Assembly: GCA_002269645.1 (NCBI GenBank)
Contig: NIVC01000910.1
Span: forward strand, 260,944-324,943
Source of the DNA: Macrostomum lignano
Taxonomy: Eukaryota
Length of the DNA stretch: 64,000 nt
Direction: 5' to 3'
The notes below the pieces were generated by a model. It did not search any database. It saw only the letters and a list, made by a program, of their open reading frames with translations, and was not told the origin of the DNA. Of this stretch, positions 6,001-63,873 are shown piece after piece (position 1 is the first letter of the stretch; each line of letters starts with the position of its first letter). A program made the translations under genes and the position numbers.

Positions 6001-7595
6001 CTTCGCATTAGTTACTATACGAGCTAGAAAAAAGAGCTGATTTCCGATTCGAAGTCAGTTCTTTTTGGTCGCAATTCCAGCAAGGTGTCTTACATGCACT
6101 TCTCCAGTAATTTCAAGCTTGGACTAACCAATAGTCGCAGATCTTTGGCTGACAAACTAACTTTTTATCTTCTGATTTCATCAGATTTCCAGCCCTACGT
6201 GAGCAGCGTAAGATCATTTAGCTTTTACCGCCGACTAATAAATCTTTTATTGTGTGTACGCATTGCACCGTCATCTATAATTAATACTCGTTAAGGGATA
6301 CTTCGTACACTGAGTTGTAGTACACCCTTGTGACCAGTTGTTACAACCGTTCACTTGCACAAAACAACACGCAAGTTTGATTACACTCGCCGTTACCTGA
6401 ATAGACCTCTGGTTGGATAGTACGGTGTAGCATAATCCTCCATTCCCTATCTGCGATCGGTGAAAGCTTAACTGCCGAGCCTCGTCGGGGCTCGCTCTGA
6501 TTGATTAGTTTGGCGGGGCTTAGGCGGGCAGCTCGACAGGAGCAACTGGATCGGTGCATTCTCCTCCGCGGCGTTTTCCTTGTTTTGCGGCGCGGGAGAG
6601 ACCAGACGCTGCGGGAGCACTGAGGACAGGTTGATGCGACATTCCCGGTGGGAGATTAACAAGCCGCTTGCTTGTTAGTGTCGGATTTCGGTCAAATCGA
6701 ACCTGGGATGAACAACGGTGTCGGAGTGCAGGGGGGGGGCAGCTTATAAACTTGCTCCTACTCATATCTGCCGTGTTTTGTATGATAAACATTTTTCCTG
6801 TATAGAAACCGTCATCTGGATTTATAAAGCTTTCACAATTTTGATAAGAAACTTATATATAACTAAAGCTAAGCATCTTCTTACAAGTGTACACAAAGTG
6901 CAGTTTATACTTTATCTAGCAACAGCAATAGTCGGACGAAGAGATCCATTAAAATTCTGCTGACATTTGACAGAGATAAATTGCCCTTTGCTACCTACCC
7001 TAGGGAGTCTCCGGTGCCACTGTCAATTTCAATATGCCACTTGGAGGTTGAAGAAGACCTTATGTATAACCGGAACATTTACAGATTGACTTAACCAGCA
7101 GTTACATGCAACGAGTTTAAATATTTTTTCTGTGCATTAGTATGGTGTAGGCAATGAGTGCCAAAATTGGTACAACTAGTACTTTGATTCCGGTAAATCA
7201 TGTTCCTAGTTTAGATTACCACTGGCCGAAATCATATATACTGAGCAAAATAGAGAGCGTATGCCCTCTCCTGTGCTGCCCACTCTTGTGGGGCAACTTT
7301 AAGCAAAACAAACCGTCAGATATTTTGCAGGGGCGCGAAAGATCGGGGAGCAATAAATCCCGCCTCGTTCGCCGAAGCCGATTAACCCCCGCCCTACAGT
7401 TGACTTCAGAGGTCCTGCGGTGCTTCGAAATCCATCATTGCAATTAATTATCTTTTTGCAGATTCCATTAGGACAGTATTGGGTTTTAATTAGACAGTAT
7501 TAGCAGTACTCCCTGTACTGCTAATCTGCTGGTTGAGTTCCCGATAAGGGCTTAAAAAAACTGAGTTTGAAACTGTTTAAACTGTTTGGGATTAA

Positions 7596-18652: not shown

Positions 18653-20019
18653 GCACTCCCCAGACTAAGACGCCAAAGGTAATCCCGCGGAAGTATTTGC
18701 CAGGCGTCCGCTATCGCCTGCCGCAGCTGAGCAACGCCTTACCCTTCACCCACCCATAGACGAGTTATTTTGTCTATGGTAGAACTGTAGAAGAGAGGTC
18801 GCCCGTAGAAGAGTTGATAATTTTGGCCATAGACATCAGCACAAAGAAGGATGCCAGCAGCAACCTCTATTATAGACTGCCAGTGACGTTTTTTGATCTT
18901 GTACAGTGTACAGAAGTACATATGCAGTTAGTGGTTTTTATGTTTTCTGTAGTTTGCCGATTGTAATTTAAAGTTTACATTGTTTTCAAAACTGTTGTTG
19001 ATTTTTTAGCTCATTGAAATCATGCTCAAGCATCGACTGCCATTCAGTAAAGATCTGTCGTTTTCTGTCTATGTCTATGTCTGTGGGCAGTGTTTTGACC
19101 ATAGACTAATCATAAACTGATTTTTCTATTTTTTTGACGAAATGCATTGCATCAAATCTGGTGTTTTATCGCAGGCCTATTATCGGATGGGAATCGAAAA
19201 TATGCAGTAGTATATGTTCCAGTAGTATGTTTACCCTGCCAGATAATGCAGCCTGCAGCTAAGTTCCTGGCTTTCAAATGATCTTTGTATAAAAATACAA
19301 AAACTTCAATAATTTCTAGCGCATTTCACAGAGATTGGATAGTTAAGCAGATTCAGCCGCGGTTAGTAAGCAAGTGAGGTCGGAGAGAATTTATATTGCC
19401 TAAGATCTTGTCTAGGAACTCGCACACTTAGATAAAAGCCTTACTGTCAGACGTGCTAGAAGAAGCAAAGTCGTGTTGCCGTGAGAGCGCAGATAAGCAA
19501 CGAGAGATTTCTCTCCAAAGGGGGTAATTGTGCCGCCTGATAAAAATGTTTTTGTAATGTTACTATTTAGCTCGTTTATAAGTACATAGCTATTATGCAT
19601 ATGTACTGCTTTACTTACTACAGGCACGCCAATTAATGTAGACCAAGATATCTCTATAAGCCTAAGACCCGACCAGATGGGTAAGCAGATGCGCCTTCTG
19701 CCTATCAGCAAATATCACCGTTGGCTGACAGATTCCGCCCTTAGAAATTGTGTCCGTTATTTGTGTCTGGCCAGTGGGTGTATTTTGTCATTTTTGTACT
19801 TGTATGAGAACTGATAAGTGGCCAACAGACAGATAAGCAATTGTGCTATTGTGTTATTATAGAACTCGGCCTAACTTTTTATTTGCAATCCAAATTAGAT
19901 TCGCAGTAAAACGCGCTTTACCAACTATTTTAAGTAGGATTTGGCAAGTTTTTCTGCTTGCTTTAGGTTTTTAGGCTCAAATTTGATTTGTAATATTGCA
20001 TTGGAGAGTTAAATGGCGT

Positions 20020-26142: not shown

Positions 26143-27200
26143 GATAGTGAATGCTGTCAGGATAGTTAACACTGCCACAATAGTGAATGCTGTCACAATA
26201 GTGAATGCTGTCAGAATAGTGAATGCTGTCAGAATAGTGAATGCTGTCAGAATAGTGAATGCTGTCAGAATAGTGAATGCTGTCAGAATAGTGAATGCTG
26301 TCAGAATAATGAATGCTGTCAGAATAGTGAATGCTGTCAGAATAGTGAATGCTGTCAGGATAGTGAATTCTGTCTGGATAGTGAACACTGCCACGATAGT
26401 GAACACTGCCACGATAGTGAAAACTGCCACGATAGTGAACACTGCCACGATAGTGAACACTGCCACGATAGTGAATGCTGTCAGAATAGTGAATGCTGTC
26501 AGGATAGTGAATGCTGTCAGAATAGTGAATGCTGTCAGGATAGTGAATGCTGTCTGGATAGTGAACACTGCCACGATAGTGAACACTGCCACGATAATGA
26601 ACACTGCCACGATAGTGAACACTGCCACGATAGTGAACACTGCCACGATAGTGAACACTGCCACGATAGTGAATGCTGTCAGAATAGTGAATGCTGTCAA
26701 GATAGTGAATGCTCTCACTGCTATCAGGATAGTGAATGCTGTCAGAATAGTGAATGCTGTCAGGATAGTGAATGCTGTCTGGATAGTGAACACTGCCACG
26801 ATAGTGAACACTGCCACGATAGTTAACACTGCCACGATAGTGAACACTGCCACGATAGTGAATGCTGTCAAGATAGTGAATGCTCTCACTGCTATCAGGA
26901 TAGTGAATGCTGTCAGAATAGTGAATGCTGTCAGGATAGTGAATGCTGTCTGGATAGTGAACACTGCCACGATAGTGAACACTGCCACGATAGTGAATGC
27001 TGTCAGAATAGTGAATGCTGTCAAGATAGTAAATGCTCTCACTGCTATCAGGATAGTGAATGCTGTCAGGATAGTGAATGCTGTCAGGATAGTGAATGCT
27101 GTCAGGATAGTGAATGCTGTCAGGATAGTGAATGCTGTCAGGATAGTGAATGCTGTCAGGATAGTGAATGCTGTCAGGATAGTGAATGCTGTCAGGATAA
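26143..27200. repeat. Minisatellite, 18-bp unit with two variant types in blocks
   Basis: gatagtgaatgctgtcag and gatagtgaacactgccac. Confidence 0.97.
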
Positions 27201-28019: not shown

Positions 28020-28580
28020 TAGATTACTAGATTGATAGACTGATCGATTGATAGGCTGGTCGATTGATAGATTGATAGACTGGTTGATTGATAGATTGAT
28101 AGACTGGTCGATTGATAGATTGATAGACTGGTCGATTGATAGATTGATAGACTGTTCGATTGATAGATTGATAGGCTGGTCGATTGATAGATTGATAGGC
28201 TGGTCGATTGATAGATTGATAGACTGGTCGATTGATAGATTGATAGACTGGTCCATTGATAGATTGATAGACTGGTCGATTGATAGATTGATAGGCTGGT
28301 CGATTGATAGATTGATAGACTCGTCGATTGATAGATTGATAGACTGGTCGATTGATAGATTGATAGACTGATAGATCTATAGATAGATTGATAGACTAAT
28401 GTATTTATAGACTGATAGACAGATTGATGGACTGATAGATTGATAGACTGATAGATAGATAGATAGATGGATAGATAGATTGATAGACTAATAGATTTAT
28501 ATACTAATAGACTGCTAGGTTGATTAATAGATTGATAGACTGATAAATTGATAGACTGGTAGATTGATAAACTGGTAGGC
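28020..28580. repeat. GATA-derived minisatellite, 24-bp unit, grading into (GATA)n
   Basis: gattgatagattgatagactggtc repeated. Confidence 0.95.
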
Positions 28581-52789: not shown

Positions 52790-53615
52790 GCTAGGGGTAT
52801 ATAATGGGGTGTTGGTGCTGGTCTGGGGTATATAATGGGGTGTTGGTGCTGGTCTGGGGTATATAATGGGGTGTTGGTGCTGCTCTGGGGTATATAATGG
52901 GGTGTTGGTGCTGGTCTGGGGTATATAATGGGGTGTTGGTGCTGCTCTGGGGTATATAATGGGGTGTTGGTGCTTGTCTGGGGTATATAATGGGGTGTTG
53001 GTGCTGCTCTGGGGTATATAATGGGGTGTTGGTGCTTGTCTGGGGTATATAATGGGGTGTTGGTGCTGGTCTGGGGTATATAATGGGGTGTTGGTGCTGC
53101 TCTGGGGTATATAATGGGGTGTTGGTGCTTGTCTGGGGTATATAATGGGGTGTTGGTGCTGCTCTGGGGTATATAATGGGTGTTGGTGCTTGTCTGGGGT
53201 ATATAATGGGGTGTTGGTGCTGATCTGGGGTATATAATGGGGTGTTGGTGCTGCTCTGGGGTATATAATGGGGTGTTGGTGCTTGTCTGGGGTATATAAT
53301 GGGGTGTTGGTGCTGGTCTGGGGTATATAATGGGGTGTTGGTGCTGCTCTGGGGTATATAATGGGGTGTTGGTGCTTGTCTGGGGTATATAATGGGGTGT
53401 TGGTGCTGCTCTGGGGTATATAATGGGTGTTGGTGCTTGTCTGGGGTATATAATGGGGTGTTGGTGCTGATCTGGGGTATATAATGGGGTGTTGGTGCTG
53501 CTCTGGGGTATATAATGGGGTGTTGGTGCTGCTCTGGGGTATATAATGGTGTGTTTGTGCTGCTCTGGGGAATATAATGGGGTGTTGGTGCTGCTCTGGG
53601 GTATATAATCGGGTG
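52790..53615. repeat. G-rich minisatellite, 31-bp unit
   Basis: ggggtatataatggggtgttggtgctggtct, about 26 copies. Confidence 0.97.
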
Positions 53616-54054
53616 TTAAATTTTCAGGAGTTTCATTCCGGTAAATCTAATAGTTTTGTTGTACTAGGCAGGCTAATCGAGTTTTAGAATATGCAAATAT
53701 AGTTAAGTAGTATATATAGATGCAGGGTAACGAGAAACATCAATTTCGCCAAACCTAGCCACTGGTGGAATTAAACTAGCTTTAGACTTGTGTGGCGCGT
53801 TCGGGTCACGCACTGTGTAACAACTAGCTATCCTGCTTTCAAGACGGGTAGTTGAATTAATTATGGAGATTTTGGGACTGCTCTGTAAGGCCTGTGTTTT
53901 ACTCGTTGCAGAGTTTCGCTCAAGCGCACGAGTTGTGGGCTTGTAGTGCACAATTCATTAACTTCATTAACCACTCCTGTGTTCTCAGAAGCAGTCTGCA
54001 CTTTTGAAAGCACTGCTTCATGATTTGCCTTCAAGAACACGTCTCGTTACTCTC

Positions 54055-55320
54055 CGAAAATCGCCCTGAATCCTCCCCAGAATCGCCCTGAATCCTCCCC
54101 AGAATCGCCCTGAACCCTCCCCAGAATCGCCCTGAACCCTCCCCAGAATCGCCCTGAATCCTCCCCAGAATCGCCCTGAACCCTCCCCAGAATCGCCCTG
54201 AACCCTCCCCAGAATCGCCCTGAATCCTCCCGAAGAATCTCCCTGAACCCTCCCCAGAATCGCCCTGAACCCTCCCCAGAATCGCCCTGAATCCTCCCCA
54301 GAATCGCCCTGAATCCTCCCCAAGAATCTCCCTGAACCCTCCCCAAGAATCGCCCTGAATCCTCCCCAAGAATCGCCCTGAAACCTCACTAAAAATCGCC
54401 CTGAAACCTCCCGAAGAATCGCCCTGAAACCTCACTAAAAATCTCCCTGAAACCTCCCGAAGAATCGCCCTGAATCCTCCCTAAAAGTCACCATGAAACC
54501 TCCCCAAGAATCGCCCTGAATCCTCCCCAAGAATCGCTCTGAAACCTCACTAAAAGTCACCATGAAACCTCCCCAAGAATCGCCCTGAATCCTCCCCAAG
54601 AATCGCCCTGAAACCTCACTAAAAATCGCCCTGAATCCTCCCCAGAATCGCCCTGAATCCTCCCCAAGAATCTCCCTGAACCCTCCCCAGAATCGCCCTG
54701 AATCCTCCCGAAGAATCTCCCTGAACCCTCCCCAGAATCGCCCTGAATCCTCCCCAGAATCTCCCTGAACCCTCCCCAAGAATCGCCCTGAATCCTCCCC
54801 AAGAATCGCCCTGAAACCTCACTAAAAATCGCCCTGAAACCTCCCGAAGAATCGCCCTGAAACCTCACTAAAAATCTCCCTGAAACCTCCCGAAGAATCG
54901 CCCTGAATCCTCCCTAAAAGTCACCATGAAACATCCCCAAGAATCGCCCTGAATCCTCCCCAAGAATCGCTCTGAAACCTCACTAAAAGTCACCATGAAA
55001 CCTCCCCAAGAATCGCCCTGAATCCTCCCCAAGAATCGCCCTGAAACCTCACTAAAAATCGCCCTGAATCCTCCCCAGAATCGCCCTGAATCCTCCCCAA
55101 GAATCTCCCTGAACCCTCCCCAGAATCGCCCTGAATCCTCCCCAAGAATCTCCCTGAACCCTCCCCAGAATCGCCCTGAATCCTCCCCAAGAATCTCCCT
55201 GAACCCTCCCCAGAATCGCCCTGAATCCTCCCCAAGAATCTCCCTGAACCCTCCCCAGAATCGCCCTGAATCCTCCCCAAGAATCGCCCTGAATCCTCTC
55301 CAGAATCGCCCTGAAGCCCC
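54055..55320. repeat. Minisatellite, 22-23-bp unit, with a ~430-bp higher-order duplication
   Basis: agaatcgccctgaatcctcccc; the variant block tcaccatgaa recurs at 54488 and 54921. Confidence 0.96.
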
Positions 55321-56277
55321 CTGTCTACGCCTAAGACGCTGCTCTACTATCCGAGAATCTCAGAAAACACATCCAGTTGCTGTGTTGGCCGAAATATTAA
55401 TTGCTGTCTCGGCTTGTATTTTCGTAATCCTAATCCACCTCTGCAATGAAAATCTACACGAGTCTAATTAAAATCGGTGTCAGCCGCCTCTCCCGCGCTC
55501 TCTAATCCTCCTCTCTTCGCTTCTCCGGTTGTCCGCAATATCCGGCTTATTTTCCTCACACTGTGGCATTCGGATTAAATGGACAGTCACGCCGGAGGTG
55601 CCGCTTGCATCCCGTTAGTTTTGTTTTACCAAATCGGCTCTCTATACTGCTGTCTCACGCAGAGTCTGTCCGCCCGTCTGTCAAGCTGTAATTTTCCCCA
55701 ATCCCAGCTGCCCAATGGAGTGGGAGCGGCGGCGGCGCAAGTGCAAGCGCTATAGGCTAATTAATGCTTCATCTACGCTTCCCCCCTTTAACTCCGTCTT
55801 GCTATGCCTATTTACGACTGGCTTCCACTTTGCTCGCCTGCCCTCTTTGCTGTCAGCACATTTCCCCAGCTATTAACACCACTGCTACAGGGGACTCAGA
55901 CATTTGAGTTGCCTGTCTCTCTCTCTCTCCCCGAAAGTCTTCGTTCCGCATTTTTATTAAATGCTGTGCGGCCATCGAGACGATATTGTCCTGTGGGTAA
56001 GCCTCAACTAGGCTTCGCATGGATTGATTGGTCTCGATTTCATTATCGATTTTTGTTGAATATGCTCATTTCTCCGGGTCCCGTGGGTGCTTGATAGGGC
56101 TGCTTTCTCGGCTCTTGTGTGTTGGCAACTTTTTTTACTGGACTTCTTTTGAGGATATCCAACTGCTTTTTGAGCGAGACCATCCGCTGGCAACCCCTTT
56201 GAGTTCAGGGCCGACCCGGCCCCACTGTGGGACAGGCAGTCCCTGCATAGAACACAGCCCTCCACTGCCACCCGCAG

Positions 56278-56460
56278 GCCCTGCTGCAAGCGCACGACGT
56301 GCTAGCCCAGGATGTGTACAGCGACCAGGCAATAAGAGTGACCCCGCCGCCAGTGTCGTCCTATTTGAACGGCGACGCGGAGGAGCCTCCCGAGGTTGAG
56401 ATGGACAATGTGACCCGTGTGCGCCTGGTGCAGTTTCAGAAGAATACTAACGAGCCTATG
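56278..56460 (+). CDS. CASK: CASK exon, end of L27C to start of PDZ ([25 protein letters not shown]...[18 protein letters not shown])
   Basis: cccgcag acceptor and gtgagc donor; 183 nt, phase 0/0; near-identical to the CASK motifs. Confidence 0.97.
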
Positions 56461-56533: not shown

Positions 56534-56612
56534 GGAATCACTCTGAAGATGTCTGAGGACGGCAAGATAATTGTGGCCCGAATCATGCACGGTGGAATGA
56601 TTCACCGGCAAG
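56534..56612 (+). CDS. CASK: CASK exon, PDZ ([26 protein letters not shown])
   Basis: ttgtag acceptor and gtgagt donor; 79 nt; follows a 73-nt intron. Confidence 0.97.
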
Positions 56613-56707: not shown

Positions 56708-56793
56708 GCACTCTGCACGTTGGCGACGAGATTCGAGAAATCAATGGCGAACCAGTCATTGGCCAATCAGTGGAAGTTCTACAACGAATGCTG
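56708..56793 (+). CDS. CASK: CASK exon, PDZ ([29 protein letters not shown])
   Basis: tcctcag acceptor and gtgtgt donor; 86 nt; ends in phase 0. Confidence 0.96.
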
Positions 56794-56967
56794 GTGTGTG
56801 TTTTTCTGATTCACGATACTATCTTTCGATACATATCGGGGAAGTGCTTAGTAATTGAGCGTTGTCAAATATCAATTGATAATTTCAAATTATAACGGCA
56901 TTGTTGCACGCTATTAGCAGTAGTTAGAAATGCTTTTTGTTATGAAAAACCCTGATAAATATTTTTA

Positions 56968-57051
56968 AATGGCCGCAAAGATTCGAACCCGCCTGAAATC
57001 CAGACCAGATGAATGGAAAGCGGGCACTATAACCGCTGGGCTACTATCCCT
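56968..57051 (-). other. tRNA-like fragment (SINE head or tRNA pseudogene)
   Basis: Minus strand TAGCCCAGCGG (A box) ... GGGTTCGAATC (B box) with long-variable-arm spacing; no good acceptor stem. Confidence 0.5.
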
Positions 57052-57136: not shown

Positions 57137-57238
57137 ATGGACTTGCGCGGCAGGGTGACGCTGAGGCTGGTGTCCCACCCTGCCGGGCGGCCCGGCGGCC
57201 CTCGAACCGCGGCGGGCAGTCAATCGGCGGCTAAGGAG
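57137..57238 (+). CDS. CASK: Candidate alternative (duplicated) PDZ-terminal exon A (MDLRGRVTLRLVSHPAGRPGGPRTAAGSQSAAKE)
   Basis: gtccag acceptor and GAG|gtactt donor; 102 nt, phase 0/0, no stop; GC-rich island in AT-rich intron; aligns with KEARGSVTLKIVPS of exon B. Confidence 0.65.
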
Positions 57239-57943
57239 GTACTTTTTAAATAAAAAACTTTAGTAGCGCTTTGAAGTGTTGCTATAAAACCGACTATAAA
57301 ACCGATATGGGTTCGATTTGCGTTATTAATAATTACATTATTTTATTGCTTGATTAACAGAAACTGAGATCTTACTGAGAGTTTTGCTCTTCAAATAATC
57401 TGTTCAATTCAGTAATAATCAATTTTTTCGATAGTTTTAATGTACCAATTCAGCTGAAGAAATGTGGAGAGAAAACTGCCAATCTAACCTGATTAGGTGT
57501 TGGAGACAGAGTAATTCGTTAGTCTCGTTATTACATTACCCAGAGGCTATCTACTGTCTTTAACATGTACTTTTATATAAAAGTACAATAGAGCGAGATA
57601 TAAGTGGTGCAGAAAGGAAGAGAGGAGAAAGAAGTGAAGGGCCTAAGCCGCGGGTTGAAGTTGTATTTATACTAACAATGATGAACAGGCCAGCCAAATT
57701 GTCTGTGGTAAATGAACGGTTACGATAGTCTGTGGGAAAGGCATGGTAGACAAAGGGAGACGGCTAACTGAAAAGTACAAGGTAATAGAAAGTACAAATA
57801 TTTGGAGGATGGAAATCCGACAGGCTCGGGGGGCCAACGGGTAACGATAGATAGAGGGGATTTGAACGGCAAAAACAGTAGAATGATTAAATAGCGAGTA
57901 TTTGCGCATTGAGTTTAGTTCGTGAAAGCGGTCAACTGTTTAG

Positions 57944-58600
57944 TCAGGTTGTAACAATGCCGGGCCGGAAGCCGAGCCGGCAGGCGGGCCAGCAGACGAG
58001 ACGGGCAGCATCTTCCTTGGTGTCAGTGCCGATGACGATGTTGCCGACATAGAGGCTGCCAATGATGCGCTCGAGCTCGGATTGGGTGAGGTCGGAATCT
58101 CCCGAGTTAATTGCGTCTAAGCATATCTTGTGGAGGACCGCCAGGAGAATACACGCTCTGGGAGAGGCGCCCATGACGATGCGAGTGAAGCGCCAGAGCT
58201 CGAAGCTGCCCTGTACTAGCGGCTTGGTGATGTACTTCGGAGGATGATGCAGAGGACGTCGCGGTGAGGTTCGTGAACGCCTTTCTGGTAGAAGGCGGCC
58301 TTGAGGTCAGATGAGATGCCGAACTGGTGAGCGCGGTGAACTAGAAGGACTTGAAGCATTGACGTCAGCAGGTTGGGCCCAGGCTCTAGGAGGTCGTTGA
58401 GTGTGGCGCCAGCGAGCGAGGTCTTGGTAGAAGCGTCGACGACGGGGCGGATCTTCGTCGTGTTGGAGCTCCTCTTTATGACTGGGAAGTGCGGCAGAGT
58501 CTGGATGACTGGGCCAGCTACCTGGCCAGGGCTGACTCGTTCCAGGACACCTTCTTGCTTGCGCTTCTCGAACTCGGCGTAGTAGGCCTCGCGCTCGGAA
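57944..58600 (-). pseudogene. Frameshifted BEL/Pao reverse transcriptase remnant
   Basis: Manual translation gives LPHFPVIKRSSNTTKIRPVVDAS...LNDLLEPGPNLL...SSDLKAAFYQ, then after a frameshift WRFTRIVMGASP...SLYVGNIVIG; YVDD reads YVGN at 58040-58051. Confidence 0.88.
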
Positions 58601-60149
58601 GGCTGAGGCGGCGGTGGGTGGCTTGAGCACGACCGAAGGCCTGGCCAAAGTTGGAAGGTAGGAGCTCGGCTCCAGGTTCGAATGGCAGGTCGACGGAGAT
58701 TCGAACGTCGGTATCGCGCATGATGGAGTCGGGCAGGCGTTCCTGGGGTCTGTCGTTCCTGGCGTCGGGCCTTTCAGCATCCTTTGCCGTGCCGAGAGCT
58801 TCGAGGTTGGACATGCTGTCCAGAAGTCGGTCGAGGTGGAGCCCATCGTTGTTAGGGAAAGTGTTCGCAATGACCACTTGCGAGGAGCCGAGGAAGCCGT
58901 TATGACGAGAGGCTGTGATATCAAGGGAGCCGTCGAGGATGGCCCCGAAGGGTGTCGGGCAGGCTTTGAGAGTCGGTCGAAGCGCTTGGGCGGGTACGTT
59001 AGGGCTGATAGGCTGACTGGCGTTGCTGCAGGGACAAGAACTCTTGGGCTCTTGGCTGGCAGTGGAACTTAACTTCGCGGCTGGGCGAGATTTAATGTCG
59101 GCGCAAGGAGCGGGGTCAGGTCGATAGGCGTCCGACGATAAGCTATTGCCAATGCTGCGGGCTTGTAGCGGCTGGGAACTGGCGTTGCCCAGAAGGATGG
59201 CGGAAGCGAAGGTCGCAGCCGGAGGGGTAGCGGAAGCGGCTCTGAGCGTCTTCAGCTTGTAATCGAGGTGGCACTGGAGCTGTGTCATAGTTGGCATGAG
59301 AGGCTGCCCGTTGGCAGCACGAAGGTTGCGGATCTCGCTCTGCAGCTCGATCGGGAGGCGGCTCCACAGGGCGTAGACGTAGCCGTCGATGGTGCTGGCG
59401 GGCTCGCCAAGGCGGAGGAGCTGGCCGGTAGCGAGTCGGAGGGCGTCGGTGTAGGTCTCGAGCTCGTCTATGTCGGAGGCAGAGTTGCAGTGAAGGGCGA
59501 GGAGACGCTGGAAGGAGGCGTTCTTTTGCTCCTGTGTGTCGGTGTAGTTGGCCTGGAGGACACGGCAGGCTTCGGCGTAGGCGTTGGGTTGGTAGGCATT
59601 GAGGGCACCGAGCTTCTTGAGAGCGGAGCCGGAGAGCAGACCGCGAAGCGCCTCGAATTTGTCGACGTCGTTGAGGCTGGAGCGGTCAACGCGGTAGACG
59701 AAGGCGTCCCAGAAGCCCGGAAATGCAGCAGGGTCCGTACCGTCGAAGGTCGGGAGATGTACGTTCTTGTGAATGGTGGAGCGGACGAGCCCGGCCGGAT
59801 CGTGAGCATCTGGTGCGGGTGTTGAAGCAGTTGGTGTTGAGGCTGGACGGACGGTGGCGGCGAGCTGCTGAATGAGCTGCTGGTTCTGCTGCATCATCGC
59901 GGTCATTGAGGCGATGAGGGCGTTTACGTCGACGGAGGCAGCGGGAGCTGTTGCAAGGATCGGAGTTGTGGAAGTAGCAGCGAGAGGAGCAGTAGATGTC
60001 GTGGCGGATGAAGCAGCTGGCGGCGGGTCACTGGCTTCGACGGGTGGCTGCTCCGCGGCAGTGGTCGCTTCAGTAGAGGTTGAGAGGTGGTCGTTCTGGG
60101 ACTGCTGATGGTCGCCAGATTGGTCAGTTGTCGATCGTGTGATGACCAT
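58518..60149 (-). CDS. BEL/Pao gag-like ORF (543 aa) running into a pol remnant
   Basis: LPTFDGTDPAAFPGFWDAF...SLNDVDKFEALRGLLSGSA...AYAEACRVLQANY matches the BEL gag DUF1759 pattern; ATG lies 5 nt after the PBS. Confidence 0.88.
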   Translation of the reverse strand: MVITRSTTDQSGDHQQSQNDHLSTSTEATTAAEQPPVEASDPPPAASSATTSTAPLAATSTTPILATAPAASVDVNALIASMTAMMQQNQQLIQQLAATVRPASTPTASTPAPDAHDPAGLVRSTIHKNVHLPTFDGTDPAAFPGFWDAFVYRVDRSSLNDVDKFEALRGLLSGSALKKLGALNAYQPNAYAEACRVLQANYTDTQEQKNASFQRLLALHCNSASDIDELETYTDALRLATGQLLRLGEPASTIDGYVYALWSRLPIELQSEIRNLRAANGQPLMPTMTQLQCHLDYKLKTLRAASATPPAATFASAILLGNASSQPLQARSIGNSLSSDAYRPDPAPCADIKSRPAAKLSSTASQEPKSSCPCSNASQPISPNVPAQALRPTLKACPTPFGAILDGSLDITASRHNGFLGSSQVVIANTFPNNDGLHLDRLLDSMSNLEALGTAKDAERPDARNDRPQERLPDSIMRDTDVRISVDLPFEPGAELLPSNFGQAFGRAQATHRRLSLPSARPTTPSSRSASKKVSWNESALAR

Positions 60150-60153
60150 GACG

Positions 60154-60164
60154 CTCTGCTACCA
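60154..60164 (-). promoter_or_regulatory. Primer-binding site TGGTAGCAGAG, complementary to the 3' end of initiator tRNA-Met
   Basis: Lies 4 nt inside the 5' LTR; metazoan tRNAi-Met ends CUCUGCUACCA. Confidence 0.85.
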
Positions 60165-60565
60165 AAATTGTCGATTAGACAATAAACTAATAGAGCGAGA
60201 TATAAGTGGTGCAGAAAGGAAGAGAGGAGAAAGAAGTGAAGGGCCTAAGCCGCGGGTTGAAGTTGTATTTATACTAACAATGATGAACAGGCCAGCCAAA
60301 TTGTCTGTGGTAAATGAACGGTTACGATAGTCTGTGGGAAAGGCATGGTAGACAAAGGGAGACGGCTAACTGAAAAGTACAAGGTAATAGAAAGTACAAA
60401 TATTTGGAGGATGGAAATCCGACAGTACACTAACGATTTTCGTATTGAAAGTGATTTTTAAGCGAATTAACTTCAATTGTTTTTCGCTCTGTTAATCGTT
60501 AATAATAAAAAATTTATAATATAGCAAACTTACTGCACCTGCTGGGTGTTATCAATTGATTGCAG

Positions 60566-60634
60566 AAGGAGGCCAGAGGCAGTGTAACGCTGAAAATTGT
60601 GCCCAGCTACCGGAATCACCCGATGCAGTGCGAG
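60566..60634 (+). CDS. CASK: CASK exon, canonical PDZ-terminal exon B (KEARGSVTLKIVPSYRNHPMQCE)
   Basis: ttgcag acceptor and gtaaaa donor; 69 nt, phase 0/0; matches REMRGSITFKIVPSYR. Confidence 0.95.
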
Positions 60635-60689: not shown

Positions 60690-61172
60690 AAGCTTCACAA
60701 TCCCCAAGCTTCACAATCCCCAAACTTACCAAACCCAAACTTTACAATCCCTAAACTTCCCAAGCCCAAGATTCAAATCCCTAAGCTTCAAATCCCCAAG
60801 CTTCACGATCCCTAAAGTTCCCAAATCCAAGCTTCAAATCCCCAAGCTTCTAATCCCTAATCTTCACAATCCCCAAGCTTCAAGATTCCTTAACTTCCCA
60901 AACCCAAGCTTCCAATCCCCAAGCTTCACGATCCCCAAGCTTCACGATCCCCAAGCTTTACGATCCCCAAGCTTCATGATCCCCAAGCTTCACGATCCCC
61001 AAGCTTCACGATGCCCAAGCTTCACGATCCCTAAACTTCCCAAATCCAAGCTTCAAATCCGCAAGCTTCACAATCCCCGAGCTTCACAATCCCCGAGCTT
61101 CACAATCCTCAAGCTTCACATTCCCCAAGCTTCACAATCCCCGAGCTTCACAATCCCCAAGCTTCACAAACC
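60690..61172. repeat. Minisatellite, 16-bp unit
   Basis: cttcacgatccccaag variants. Confidence 0.93.
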
Positions 61173-61237: not shown

Positions 61238-61369
61238 ATCTACGTGAAGGCCATGTTCAGCTACAATCCGGACGACGACGAATTGAACCCCTGCCCTCAG
61301 GCTGGCATCCGCTTCCGGGTTGGCGACATCCTGCAGGTCATCAGCAAGGACGATCACAACTGGTGGCAG
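61238..61369 (+). CDS. CASK: CASK exon, SH3 ([44 protein letters not shown])
   Basis: cccgcag acceptor and gtcagc donor; 132 nt, phase 0/0. Confidence 0.97.
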
Positions 61370-61473: not shown

Positions 61474-61915
61474 GCTCGGTCGTGGAACGCCCCGGCCAAC
61501 ACGCCGGCCAGCCTGATCCCCTCGCCGGAGCTGCAAGAATGGCGCACCGCCTGCAGCGCCATCGAGCGCTCCAAGAAGCTCGACAGCGCTTTGAACTGTT
61601 CTGGCCTGCCGTTTTTCTCGTTCGGCCGTCGACATCACGGTTGGCGCTCCGGCGGCGGCGGCGGAGGCGGCGGCAAGTCGCGCAGCAAGCACGCCTCGGG
61701 CTCGGGCCTTGCCGCCTCGTCCACTGCGGCGTCATCAGCATCGGCGCCGACTCCCTACGACCAGCTGGAGATGGTCACCTACGAGGAGGTGGTGCGGCTG
61801 ACCAACTTCCGGCGGAAGACTCTGGTGCTGCTGGGGGCTCACGGAGTTGGCAGGCGGCACATCAAAAATACGCTCATACAGACTGCGCCTGACCGCTTCG
61901 CGTATCCGATTCCGC
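61474..61915 (+). CDS. CASK: CASK exon, end of SH3, HOOK and start of GuK ([12 protein letters not shown]...[13 protein letters not shown]...[21 protein letters not shown]...RFAYPIP)
   Basis: ttttcacag acceptor and gtgaga donor; 442 nt; open throughout. Confidence 0.96.
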
Positions 61916-61944
61916 GTGAGACTTCCGGCTGCTGACTGGTTGCC

Positions 61945-62385
61945 AGCGCACCCTCACCACTGATTCTGATTGGTTACCAGCCACCTCCCCACCGCTGATT
62001 CTGATTGGTTGTTACCAGCGCACCCCCCACCGCTGATTCTGATTGGTTGTTACCAGCGCACCCCCCACCGCTGATTCTGATTGGTTGTTACCAGCGCACC
62101 CCCCACCGCTGATTCTGATTGGTTGTTACCAGCGCACCCCCCACCGCTGATTCTGATTGGTTGTTACCAGCCACCTCCCCACCACTGATTCTGATTGGTT
62201 GCCAGCCACCTCCCTCACCACTGATTCTGATTGGTTGCCAGCCACCTCCCCCACCACTGATTCTGATTGGTGCCAGCCACCTCCCCCACCACTGATTCTG
62301 ATTGGTGCCAGCCACTTCTTCACCACTGATTCTGATTGGTTGCCAACCCCCTCCTCACCACTGATTCTGATTGGTTGCCAACCCT
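61945..62385. repeat. Minisatellite, 35-38-bp unit
   Basis: cagcgcaccccccaccgctgattctgattggttgttac variants. Confidence 0.95.
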
Positions 62386-62839: not shown

Positions 62840-63016
62840 GACGGAAGTCTGGAGCGCCTGGCCAAGGAAAGCGAACTTTTAGAGCGGCACTACGGCCACT
62901 ATTTCGATCAGAAGATCGTTAATAATGACATCGAGGAGACAATAAGCCAGCTGAAGCACTGCATTGACCAGGTTCAGACTAAGCCGCAATGGGTGCCAGT
63001 CAATTGGGTTTATTGA
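62840..63016 (+). CDS. CASK: CASK last coding exon ([11 protein letters not shown]...QWVPVNWVY-stop)
   Basis: gtgcag acceptor; ends with the conserved CASK C-terminus QWVP(V)xWVY and TGA. Confidence 0.97.
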
Positions 63017-63140
63017 AACGCTTCTCTGTCTGACACTCCATGCATATCTAGGTATTCTTTTAATTTGCGTCACTATTGCATATTTTTAGTTAATTTGATT
63101 TGGCATCGACTTTTGCCTCTGTATTTCTCTCTCTTTCCAT

Positions 63141-63873
63141 GAGGTGGCTGCAGGAAGAGTTGGGGTGTTGGGGCAGGGAGTGAGGTGGCTGCAGGAAGAG
63201 TTGGGGTGTTGGGGCAGGGAGTGAAGTGGCTGCAGGAAGAGTCGGGGTGTTGTGGCAGGGAGTGAAGTGGCTGCAGGAAGAGTTGGGGTGTTGTGGCAGG
63301 GAGTGAGGTGGCTGCAGGAAGAGTTGGGGTGTTGGGGCAGGGAGTGAGGTGGCTGCAGGAAGAATCGGGGTGTTGGGGCAGGGAGTGAGGTGGCTGCAGA
63401 AAGAGTCGGAGTGTTGTGGCAGGGAGTGAGGTGGCTGCAGGAAGAGTCGGGGTGTTGGGGCAGGGAGTGAGGTGGCTACAGGAAGAGTTGGGTGTTGGGG
63501 CAGGGAGTGAGGTGGCTGCAGGAAGAGTTGGGGTGTTGGGGCAGGGAGTGAGGTGGCTGCAGGAAGAGTTGGAGTGTTGGGGCAGGGAGTGAGGTGGCTA
63601 CAGGAAGAGTTGGGTGTTGGGGCAGGGAATGAGGTGGCTGCAGGAAGAGTTGGAGTGTTGGGGCAGGGAGTGAGGTGGCTGCAGGAAGAGTTGGGGTGTT
63701 GGGGCAGGGAGTGAGGTGGCTGCAGGAAGAGTTGGAGTGTTGGGGCAGGGAGTGAGGTGGCTGCAGGAAGAGTTGGAGTGTTGGGGCAGGGAGTGAGGTG
63801 GCTGCAGGAAGAGTTGGAATGTTGGGGCAGGGAGTGAGGTGGCTGCAGAAAGAGTCGGGGTGTTCTAAGATGC

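What the first reader, a model, noticed from the sequence alone, without database searches (positions are those of the whole stretch)
57137..60634. Two homologous exons for the last strand of the CASK PDZ domain (candidate mutually exclusive pair)
Seen: between the PDZ exon ending QRML (56793) and the SH3 exon (61238) there are two phase-0/0 exons with GT-AG sites, A (57137-57238, MDLRGRVTLRLVSH plus a G/P/A/S tail, 34 aa) and B (60566-60634, KEARGSVTLKIVPSYR, 23 aa). They align residue for residue over 14 aa (RG.VTL[RK][LI]V). Known: this segment is the end of helix B and the final beta strand of the PDZ, plus the PDZ-SH3 linker that couples PDZ to SH3-GK in MAGUK supramodules. Inference: an exon duplication gives two PDZ/linker isoforms. 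I know of cassette exons in this linker in vertebrate CASK, but not of a duplicated PDZ-completing exon. A young LTR element sits between the two exons and could change the choice.
Basis: partly seen in the sequence, partly recalled or inferred. Interest (0 to 1): 0.7.

Follow-up and report, generated by a model that had tools for sequence, protein, structure and literature searches.

The report
Old duplicated exon in flatworm CASK
The flatworm Macrostomum lignano keeps two related exons for the last strand of the PDZ domain of the scaffold protein CASK. The extra one is a real, old, alternatively spliced exon also found in molluscs and ribbon worms, but in this animal the only known mRNA with it carries both copies rather than one or the other.

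Summary
The window is Macrostomum lignano contig NIVC01000910.1, holding the 3' part of a CASK gene. Exon A (57137-57238) and exon B (60566-60634) have AG/GT sites, are phase 0/0 and translate as stated.

Their 14-residue likeness is only borderline on its own, but relatives settle it. The two older M. lignano CASK paralogues carry an A-like exon in the same intron. Its strand part is under strong purifying selection (pN 0.03, pS 0.48), while the introns around it cannot be aligned.

A-type exons also occur in a bivalve and two nemerteans. Gastropod and chiton proteins use an A-type exon alone. Amphioxus has a separate duplication of the same exon.

GenBank models for this genome were built from RNA-seq. 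One model has B only, and two have A followed by B. No A-only model exists, so "mutually exclusive" is not supported here. A behaves as a weak cassette exon, and the window's copy evolves fast (dN/dS about 0.45).

The element between the exons is a 2.8-kb insertion with identical LTRs and a gag-like ORF. It is absent from the two sister copies of the locus. The effect on the protein remains an inference, because both structure predictions failed.

The parts
56269..56460 (+). CASK exon for the L27-PDZ linker and the first PDZ strand (...[19 protein letters not shown]). The 5' boundary is approximate.
   Evidence: tblastn with P0242 and an approximate Drosophila CASK sequence
56534..56612 (+). 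PDZ exon ([26 protein letters not shown]). The CDS of the A+B GenBank model starts at its first base.
56708..56793 (+). PDZ exon ending ...SVEVLQRML (helix B), phase 0 at its 3' end
57137..57238 (+). Exon A: alternative A-type duplicate of the last-strand and linker exon. 34 codons, phase 0/0, with the weakest acceptor tested (pyrimidines 0.45, T 0.14) and a GTACTT donor. Codon 57221-57223 is Q here and H in both sister loci.
57587..60425 (-). LTR-bounded insertion of 2839 bp in the A-B intron, with a TAC or GTAC target-site duplication. It is absent from sister loci L003 and L004.
57587..57823 (.). LTR copy 1, 237 nt
60189..60425 (.). LTR copy 2, 237 nt, 100% identical to copy 1
58518..60149 (-). 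543-aa ORF of the element, matching DUF1759 (a domain I know from gag regions of Bel/Pao elements). No reverse transcriptase or integrase domain was found among the three ORFs tested.
60566..60634 (+). Exon B: the canonical exon for the last PDZ strand and the PDZ-SH3 linker. 23 codons, phase 0/0, with a protein sequence identical in all three M. lignano paralogue groups.
61238..61369 (+). First SH3 exon ([15 protein letters not shown]...DHNWWQ)
56871..56882 (+). 12-nt palindromic motif ATCAATTGATAA, about 80 nt downstream of the QRML donor. It is perfectly complementary to 60549-60560. Significance not shown.
60549..60560 (+). Second copy of the palindromic motif (TTATCAATTGAT), ending 5 nt before exon B

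Best explanation
Exon A is the Macrostomum lignano copy of an old alternative 'A-type' exon. It arose as a tandem duplicate of the exon that encodes the end of helix B, the last beta strand of the CASK PDZ domain, and the short PDZ-SH3 linker.

Shown: the pair predates the split of the three M. lignano CASK paralogue groups. Splicing yields a canonical B-only mRNA and a rarer mRNA in which the weak exon A is included ahead of B.

Likely: the pair goes back to an early spiralian ancestor.

Inferred: in the A+B protein, the A strand follows helix B directly and keeps the V-T-L-x-L-V core pattern, so it most likely completes the PDZ fold. Its 20-residue Gly/Pro/Ala/Ser tail plus the displaced 23 residues of B would then lengthen the PDZ-SH3 linker from about 9 to about 43 residues. 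That would loosen the PDZ-SH3-GK supramodule. The window's paralogue group evolves its A exon much faster than the other two groups.
For: 1. Organism and locus. The window is 100% identical to NIVC01000910.1.

2. Transcript-derived models. The GenBank annotation was made only from RNA-seq and de novo transcripts (StringTie, TACO, BLAT-mapped Trinity contigs, TransDecoder; PMC5730564). P0124 and P0241 read QRML|MDLRG...AAKE|KEARG...QCE|IYV, while P0242 lacks A.

3. Paralogues. L002 26622-26702 encodes KSLRGMVTIKIVPSLCAPKTVCQSFKE. L001 25420-25506 encodes KSLRGMVTIKIVPNLSVSRSSHQLSMLKE. Both have AG/GT sites, are phase 0/0, lie in the same intron and end in KE.

4. Selection. Between these two groups the A strand has pN 0.032 against pS 0.48, while constitutive exons show dS of 0.8-2. 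The introns cannot be aligned, and the A exon stands out as a conserved island of 52 nt at 86.5% identity, E 3e-12. A strand motif hits only A and B in each locus.

5. Other phyla. Pinctada and Lineus isoforms X1-X6 carry an A-type exon followed by a B-type exon. Lineus X8-X10 carry B only. Tubulanus, Aplysia, Gigantopelta and Liolophura proteins carry an A-type exon only. Aplysia nevertheless keeps an intact, unannotated B-type exon.

6. Structure reference. Exon B supplies the last 16 residues of the crystallised human CASK PDZ domain, PDB 1KWA and 6NH9.

7. Splice-site strength. Exon A has the weakest acceptor among the exons checked.
Against: I saw no read-level data. RNA-seq reads were multi-mapped across three near-identical loci, so the models do not show which copy is spliced this way.

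The A+B models are 5'-partial and begin inside the PDZ domain. The A-containing mRNA could therefore be a short isoform whose PDZ cannot fold at all.

The assembler settings kept only dominant isoforms (--isoform-frac 0.75), so an A-only mRNA could have been filtered out.

The window's exon A has dN/dS of about 0.45 against the other groups, has lost the conserved Pro (VPS became VSH), and has a low-complexity tail. That fits relaxed constraint.

Homology of the flatworm A exon with the mollusc and nemertean A-type exons rests on position, phase, length, the terminal KE and about 14 residues. Independent duplication is not excluded.

The effect on the protein is pure inference, because both AlphaFold runs gave pLDDT below 50 over the PDZ domain.
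Confidence: 0.72

Rival explanations
1. True mutually exclusive pair. Mature full-length CASK mRNAs carry either A or B, giving two PDZ domains with different last strands and different PDZ-SH3 linkers. The A+B model would then be a minor or artefactual form.
For: Exon A has everything needed to replace B. It starts at the homologous acceptor with x-[SD]-L-R-G, carries the strand, and ends in E just before IYVKA, as B does. RefSeq proteins of Aplysia, Gigantopelta, Liolophura and Tubulanus use an A-type exon alone. Aplysia still has an intact B-type exon. Amphioxus has isoforms with exon 1 only, exon 2 only, and both. Strong purifying selection on the A strand in two paralogue groups is most simply explained if A serves as the only last strand in some isoform. 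The annotation pipeline discarded minor isoforms.
Against: No A-only model exists in M. lignano or in Lineus. In both species the A-containing models also contain B. Both exons are multiples of three (102 and 69 nt), so double inclusion is not removed by frameshift. The A-B intron is 492 nt without the insertion, so there is no steric block. All splice sites are GT-AG. A test for pairing between the start of intron 1 and the region upstream of B was not significant (p 0.05-0.6 against shuffles, 0.3-0.5 against genomic windows).
Confidence: 0.25
2. In this paralogue group exon A is a decaying relic. The ancestral A-type exon is still functional in the other two groups, but here it is under relaxed constraint and is spliced in only as noise.
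For: Against both other groups the strand has dN of about 0.5 and dN/dS of about 0.45, compared with 0.04 between those two groups. The conserved Pro after the strand is lost. The tail is Gly/Pro/Ala-rich and low in complexity. The exon has the weakest polypyrimidine tract and a GTACTT donor. blastn no longer detects it against the other A exons. The only models containing it are 5'-partial.
Against: The frame and both splice sites are intact in all three copies of this group. The substitutions are conservative and keep the alternating hydrophobic pattern (I>L, K>R). The length differs from the other A exons by multiples of three (102, 81 and 87 nt). RNA-seq-derived models at two loci include it as the retained isoform.
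Confidence: 0.18
3. Chance resemblance: exon A is an open stretch in GC-rich intron DNA that happens to look like exon B.
For: Within the window alone the match is weak. The score is 29, another unrelated 14-mer scores 30, and shuffles give about 0.45 hits of that strength per window.
Against: A-like exons lie at the same intron position, phase and boundaries in two paralogues that are saturated at silent sites. Transcript-derived models splice exon A in at exactly these sites. The segment is not part of any repeat in the window or the fetched loci.
Confidence: 0.01

Closest known systems
A-type plus B-type exon pair in other spiralian CASK genes (RefSeq and GenBank proteins of Lineus longissimus, Tubulanus polymorphus, Pinctada imbricata, Aplysia californica, Gigantopelta aegis and Liolophura sinensis)
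   Same: An extra exon lies directly after the QRML-type exon. It is in frame, 27-35 residues long, and has the pattern x-x-[LM]-x-G-x-V-x-[FL]-K-V-x-P followed by a variable tail, ending in KE, QE or PE in all but Tubulanus (QQ). Where a B-type exon (KEARGS..KIVPS[YH]R..QCE) is also present in the model, it follows the A-type exon. Lineus, like M. lignano, has A+B and B-only isoforms.
   Different: In the gastropods, the chiton and Tubulanus the annotated proteins use the A-type exon alone. The M. lignano copy in this window is the most divergent of all (RLVSH instead of K[VI]xP). Orthology rests on few residues. I found no publication on any of these.
Tandem duplicated last-strand exon of amphioxus CASK (Branchiostoma belcheri, B. 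lanceolatum and a B. floridae hybrid; RefSeq isoforms)
   Same: Two adjacent 23-codon exons both encode the last PDZ strand plus linker: RDARGSVTLKIVPSYRPPPPNIE and KDARGSVTFKIVPSYRSTSPVCE. Isoforms with either exon or with both are annotated.
   Different: Both amphioxus copies are B-like (SYR...E, 23 residues), so this looks like a separate and younger duplication. Single-exon isoforms are annotated there but not in M. lignano.
Cassette exons 19 and 20 of vertebrate CASK (PMC8208546)
   Same: [quoted passage not shown] It is proposed to tune the flexibility of the PDZ-SH3-GK module and partner binding.
   Different: The vertebrate inserts lie after the last PDZ strand and are unstructured linker. 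They do not duplicate a structural element of the PDZ domain.
Tandem exon duplication with alternative or mutually exclusive use (from my own knowledge: tropomyosin, ion channels, Dscam; surveys by Kondrashov and Koonin 2001, Letunic 2002, Hatje and Kollmar)
   Same: Adjacent homologous exons in the same phase encode interchangeable versions of one structural element.
   Different: Here the documented A-containing mRNA includes both copies. Nothing in the sequence enforces a choice between them.

Membership tests
Mutually exclusive tandem-duplicated exon pair | Two neighbouring exons in one intron that are homologous to each other | tested here: met
   A and B are adjacent. Homology is shown through the paralogues: KSLRGMVTIKIVPS against KEARGSVTLKIVPS, 10 of 14 identical.
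Mutually exclusive tandem-duplicated exon pair | Same splice phase, so that either exon fits between the flanking exons | tested here: met
   Both are phase 0/0. Either junction, QRML|A|IYV or QRML|B|IYV, stays in frame.
Mutually exclusive tandem-duplicated exon pair | Every mature mRNA contains exactly one of the two | tested here: not met
   Transcript-derived models P0124 and P0241 contain A and B together, and P0242 contains B only. No A-only model exists. Reads themselves were not available.
Mutually exclusive tandem-duplicated exon pair | A mechanism that enforces exclusion: frameshift on double inclusion, an intron too short to splice, U2/U12 incompatibility, or competing RNA pairings | tested here: not met
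   The exons are 102 and 69 nt, both multiples of three. The A-B intron is 492 nt in the copies without the insertion. All sites are GT-AG. The pairing test was not significant. A 12-nt palindrome pair remains unexplained.
Cassette (skipped or included) exon | Transcripts both with and without the exon, and otherwise the same exon chain | tested here: met
   P0242 lacks A, while P0124 and P0241 have it, over identical downstream exons. This is model-level evidence only.
CASK / MAGUK PDZ domain, last strand | The segment aligns with the C-terminal strand of a solved CASK PDZ structure | tested here: met
   Exon B aligns with REMRGSITFKIVPSYR at the C-terminus of 1KWA and 6NH9. Exon A keeps R-G-x-V-T-L-x-L-V. 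Whether it folds as that strand is unresolved, because the AlphaFold models are low in confidence.
Spiralian A-type CASK exon | Lies between the QRML-type exon and the B-type exon, in frame, 27-35 residues, a strand motif followed by a variable tail ending in [KQP]E | tested here: met
   All three M. lignano paralogue groups fit, with tails ending AKE, FKE and LKE.
Spiralian A-type CASK exon | Common descent rather than repeated independent duplication | tested here: inconclusive
   Only about 14 residues can be aligned. Leu at position 3 is shared, but some B-type exons (sea star RELRG) also have it. The trematode locus L006 has only a B-type exon.
LTR retrotransposon, possibly Bel/Pao-related | Two direct LTRs, a target-site duplication, and an empty site in a homologous locus | tested here: met
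   237-nt LTRs at 100% identity, a TAC or GTAC duplication, and an empty site in L003 and L004.
LTR retrotransposon, possibly Bel/Pao-related | gag and pol (protease, reverse transcriptase, integrase) coding capacity | tested here: not met
   Only a DUF1759 match (E 1e-9) in one 543-aa ORF. No pol domain was found, and the element is only 2.8 kb. It is therefore a deleted or non-autonomous element.

The most novel reading that the evidence does not exclude
The A+B protein carries two competing candidates for the last strand of one PDZ domain. Splicing would then install a strand-swap switch. Either A completes the PDZ and B is released, giving a long, loose PDZ-SH3 linker or a free strand available for domain-swapped pairing. 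Or B completes it and A loops out. This would set whether the PDZ-SH3-GK module of CASK can close on partners such as neurexin. Co-inclusion of both copies in a flatworm, a nemertean, a bivalve and amphioxus would then be a conserved design rather than an annotation artefact.
Probability: 0.15. Interest if true: 0.75.

Novelty: new member of a known kind. Interest (0 to 1): 0.45.

Why it matters
CASK links neurexins, syndecans and calcium channels to the presynaptic scaffold, and its PDZ, SH3 and GK domains work as one unit. If this reading holds, many invertebrates alternatively splice a structural strand of the PDZ domain together with the PDZ-SH3 linker. In vertebrates only the flexible linker is known to be spliced this way.

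That offers a natural experiment on how PDZ-SH3 coupling controls ligand binding, in a flatworm where transgenesis works. It also gives a clean case for asking what happens when both copies of a duplicated strand end up in one protein.

For genome annotation, B-type or A-type exons are missing from some RefSeq models (Aplysia is one example), and models carrying both exons should be checked against reads.

Tried and rejected
1. Structure prediction. P0124 (A+B, lacking the first PDZ strand) gave pLDDT below 50 over residues 1-110. P0123 (paralogue, A'+B, 937 aa) gave a mean pLDDT of 45. Neither model can say which strand completes the PDZ domain.

2. RNA looping or competing structures. Inverted repeats and window-by-window duplex energies suggested pairing between the start of intron 1 and the region just upstream of B in two paralogue groups. 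A pre-defined region-against-region test was not significant, so I dropped the idea.

3. Short transcript fragments. The first protein search (156-aa query with A and B) returned no M. lignano fragment at all. The tool only returns proteins up to about 1.75 times the query length. This collection therefore gives no independent junction evidence.

4. tRNA-like look of 56960-57050. ARAGORN and Rfam both found nothing.

5. Exon A as part of a repeat. There are no other copies in the window or the fetched loci.

6. Heat-shock elements in the LTR, which are reported for some M. lignano LTR families (PMC12801592). None were found.

7. Supplementary tables of two M. lignano papers, searched for Mlig017014, Mlig003891, Mlig029367 and Mlig028881. 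No occurrences.

8. Genomic loci of amphioxus, Tubulanus and Lineus CASK. The genes were either too long for DNA to be returned or not on record.

9. The trematode Opisthorchis locus holds only a B-type exon.
Full report
**What is there**

The stated coordinates hold. Exon A (57137-57238) is preceded by cag and followed by gtac. It encodes MDLRGRVTLRLVSHPAGRPGGPRTAAGSQSAAKE. Exon B (60566-60634) is preceded by gcag and followed by gtaa. It encodes KEARGSVTLKIVPSYRNHPMQCE.

Both exons are phase 0/0. They lie between the exon ending ...VEVLQRML at 56793 and the SH3 exon starting IYVKAMF at 61238. Over the first 14 codons, 6 residues are identical and 3 conservative, and 26 of 42 bases match, including a run GGCAGnGTnACGCTGA.

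On the window alone this is only borderline. The ungapped BLOSUM62 score is 29. An unrelated 14-mer at 6721 scores 30, and locally shuffled windows give about 0.45 hits of that strength per 64 kb in six frames.

**Organism and gene**

A 760-residue query built from the window's exons identifies Macrostomum lignano CASK. The window is 100% identical to GenBank contig NIVC01000910.1 (locus L005). It holds CASK exons from about residue 124 to the stop codon at 63013.

Two further loci, L003 and L004, are 97-98% identical copies of the same gene. Two older paralogue groups, L002 and L001, are about 86-87% identical in protein.

**Transcript-level evidence**

The GenBank annotation of this assembly contains no ab initio models. 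It comes from StringTie and TACO assemblies of RNA-seq, BLAT-mapped de novo transcripts, and TransDecoder (PMC5730564).

In that annotation PAA74978.1 (P0124, this locus) and PAA76839.1 (P0241, L003) read ...QRML|MDLRG...AAKE|KEARGS...MQCE|IYVKAMF. PAA89370.1 (P0242, L004, full length) has B only. No model has A without B.

Three caveats apply:

- Reads were allowed to map to all near-identical loci.
- Only dominant isoforms were kept (--isoform-frac 0.75).
- The A+B models are 5'-partial, and their CDS starts at the first base of exon 56534. That would fit a cut at a trans-splice acceptor, but I could not test it.

**Evidence from paralogues**

In both older paralogues an A-like exon lies in the same intron, upstream of an exon B whose protein sequence is identical to the window's. 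L002 26622-26702 encodes KSLRGMVTIKIVPSLCAPKTVCQSFKE. L001 25420-25506 encodes KSLRGMVTIKIVPNLSVSRSSHQLSMLKE.

Both have AG/GT sites at the homologous positions, are phase 0/0, and end in AAG GAG|gta like the window's exon A. The three A exons are 102, 81 and 87 nt long, all multiples of three.

Silent sites between the paralogue groups are near saturation: dS is 0.8-2.1 on the flanking constitutive exons. The introns cannot be aligned. Even so, the strand part of A differs between L002 and L001 by five synonymous changes and one replacement (pN 0.032, pS 0.48). It stands out as a conserved island of 52 nt at 86.5% identity, E 3e-12. A strand motif finds exactly two hits, A and B, in each 10-35 kb locus.

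This shows that the A exon is translated and constrained in those two groups, and that the duplication predates the paralogue split.

The window's own A exon is the outlier. Its dN is about 0.5 and its dN/dS about 0.45 against either other group. VPS has become VSH, the tail is Gly/Pro/Ala-rich, and the acceptor has the poorest pyrimidine tract of the exons I checked, with a GTACTT donor. The core pattern V-T-L-x-L-V is nevertheless kept.

**Wider distribution**

The pair is not peculiar to this flatworm.

| Species | Exons in annotated proteins |
|---|---|
| Lineus longissimus (nemertean), isoforms X1-X6 | KYTTDDSQVSGDVTFKVLPDLDAPLHDENDNCHQE, then REARGSVTLKIVPSYRNNPVQCE |
| Lineus longissimus, isoforms X8-X10 | second (B-type) exon only |
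| Pinctada imbricata (bivalve) | KDLHGNVTFKVVPQDSIPIFHQRMENNNHKE, then KEARGSVSLRIVPSHRNNPIQCE |
| Tubulanus polymorphus, Aplysia, Gigantopelta, Liolophura | A-type exon alone, for example RDLKGSVVLKVLPSAASVKSENAPQKE |

The Aplysia locus still holds an intact, unannotated B-type exon of 69 nt, KEARGSIILKIIPSHRVYVPQCE, with good splice sites (L007 10815-10883).

Amphioxus has two B-like 23-codon copies, and RefSeq lists isoforms with either copy or both. A trematode locus has only a B-type exon.

So an A-type exon can serve as the only last strand in some animals, and in others it is included together with B. Common descent of the flatworm, mollusc and nemertean A-type exons is likely from position, phase, length and the terminal KE. 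It is not proven, because only about 14 residues align.

**How it most likely works**

Exon B supplies the last 16 residues of the crystallised human CASK PDZ domain (1KWA, 6NH9). The B-only protein has a nine-residue link (YRNHPMQCE) to the first SH3 strand.

In the A+B protein the A strand follows helix B directly, at the normal spacing, so I infer that it completes the fold. The A tail plus the 23 residues of B would then form a linker of about 43 residues, uncoupling the PDZ domain from SH3-GK. The alternative is that B completes the fold and A forms a 34-residue loop.

This step is inference. Both AlphaFold attempts were low in confidence over the PDZ domain, and spliced constructs could not be submitted. 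Vertebrate CASK also splices its PDZ-SH3 linker (exons 19 and 20), with proposed effects on the flexibility of the PDZ-SH3-GK module (PMC8208546). That makes a linker-tuning role plausible.

**Is the pair mutually exclusive?**

Nothing in the sequence enforces a choice. Both exons are multiples of three. The A-B intron is 492 nt in the copies without the insertion. All splice sites are GT-AG.

A 12-nt palindrome occurs both about 80 nt after the QRML donor and 5 nt before exon B (56871-56882 and 60549-60560). A perfect 13-nt complement has a similar layout in L002. However, a pre-defined test of pairing between those regions was not significant.

With the A+B models in M. lignano and Lineus, I rate a cassette-type use as more likely than strict exclusivity in this species. 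The A-only proteins of molluscs keep exclusivity open.

**The insertion**

The element at 57587-60425 has 237-nt LTRs that are 100% identical, a TAC or GTAC target-site duplication, and an empty site in both sister loci. It is a recent insertion specific to this copy.

It is 2.8 kb long and carries one 543-aa minus-strand ORF with a DUF1759 match and no pol domain. That makes it a deleted or non-autonomous element, antisense to CASK. It lengthens the A-B intron from 492 to 3327 nt.

Whether it changes splicing cannot be told from the annotation, because the exons of the three copies are nearly identical. The Q/H difference at 57223 would allow a test.

**Novelty**

I found no paper describing a duplicated last-strand exon in CASK. 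The exons are, however, already present in public protein records.

I file this as a new member of a known kind: a tandem-duplicated, alternatively spliced exon. It has one unusual feature, which is the documented inclusion of both copies in a single mRNA.

Noticed in passing
window 19625-19680 (+): Candidate alternative microexon inside the kinase domain: ctacag|GC ACG CCA ... CAG ATG G|gtaagc, encoding TPINVDQDISISLRPDQM. It is homologous to the insert DTPVKVEQEIFVSLRDDQL seen between GLVPG and GRIGTPHF in the paralogue model P0243 and in P0123. It is absent from the full-length model of this gene group (P0242).
   Followed up: partly
window 57587-60425: Recent LTR-bounded insertion with identical LTRs, present only in this copy of the locus, with a gag-like (DUF1759) ORF on the minus strand and no pol. 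It contains no heat-shock element of the kind reported for some M. lignano LTR families.
   Followed up: yes
window 56534 (start of the CDS of GenBank model PAA74978.1): The A+B model's CDS begins at the first base of an internal exon and is flagged 5'-partial. This would fit a transcript cut at a spliced-leader acceptor, giving a short CASK without the kinase and L27 domains and with a truncated PDZ domain.
   Followed up: no
window 56871-56882 and 60549-60560: The same 12-nt palindrome (ATCAATTGAT core) lies just after the QRML donor and just before the exon B acceptor. Pairing of the two would loop out exon A. L002 has a perfect 13-nt complement in a similar layout (26466-26478 and 28557-28569). 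A region-level test was not significant.
   Followed up: partly
window 53000-53617, 54052-55315, 60690-61169, 61932-62380, 63140-63864: Five tandem-repeat arrays lie in introns and just past the stop codon, with periods of 31, 23/46, 16, 38 and 41 nt. The 16-nt array fills most of the intron between exon B and the SH3 exon and differs in length between the sister loci.
   Followed up: no
window 56960-57050 (-): This segment looks like a tRNA by eye (GGTTCGAATC-like T arm). Neither ARAGORN nor Rfam calls it, and it is not repeated in the window.
   Followed up: yes
L007 10815-10883 (Aplysia californica KB941495.1): An intact 69-nt B-type CASK exon (KEARGSIILKIIPSHRVYVPQCE) with AG/GT sites. It is not part of the single RefSeq CASK protein of Aplysia, which uses an A-type exon.
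   Followed up: partly
proteins P0128, P0247-P0260 (Branchiostoma species): Amphioxus CASK has two near-identical 23-codon last-strand exons in tandem. RefSeq lists isoforms with the first, the second, or both. This appears to be a duplication independent of the spiralian one.
   Followed up: partly
window 61474-61920 (+): The SH3-GK hinge exon of this paralogue group carries a Gly8 run and a Ser/Ala-rich insert ([35 protein letters not shown]). The other two paralogue groups lack it.
   Followed up: no
window 6721 (+): A 14-residue stretch (SECRGGAAYKLAPT) scores as high against exon B as exon A does. I take it as chance. It shows how weak the within-window similarity is.
   Followed up: no
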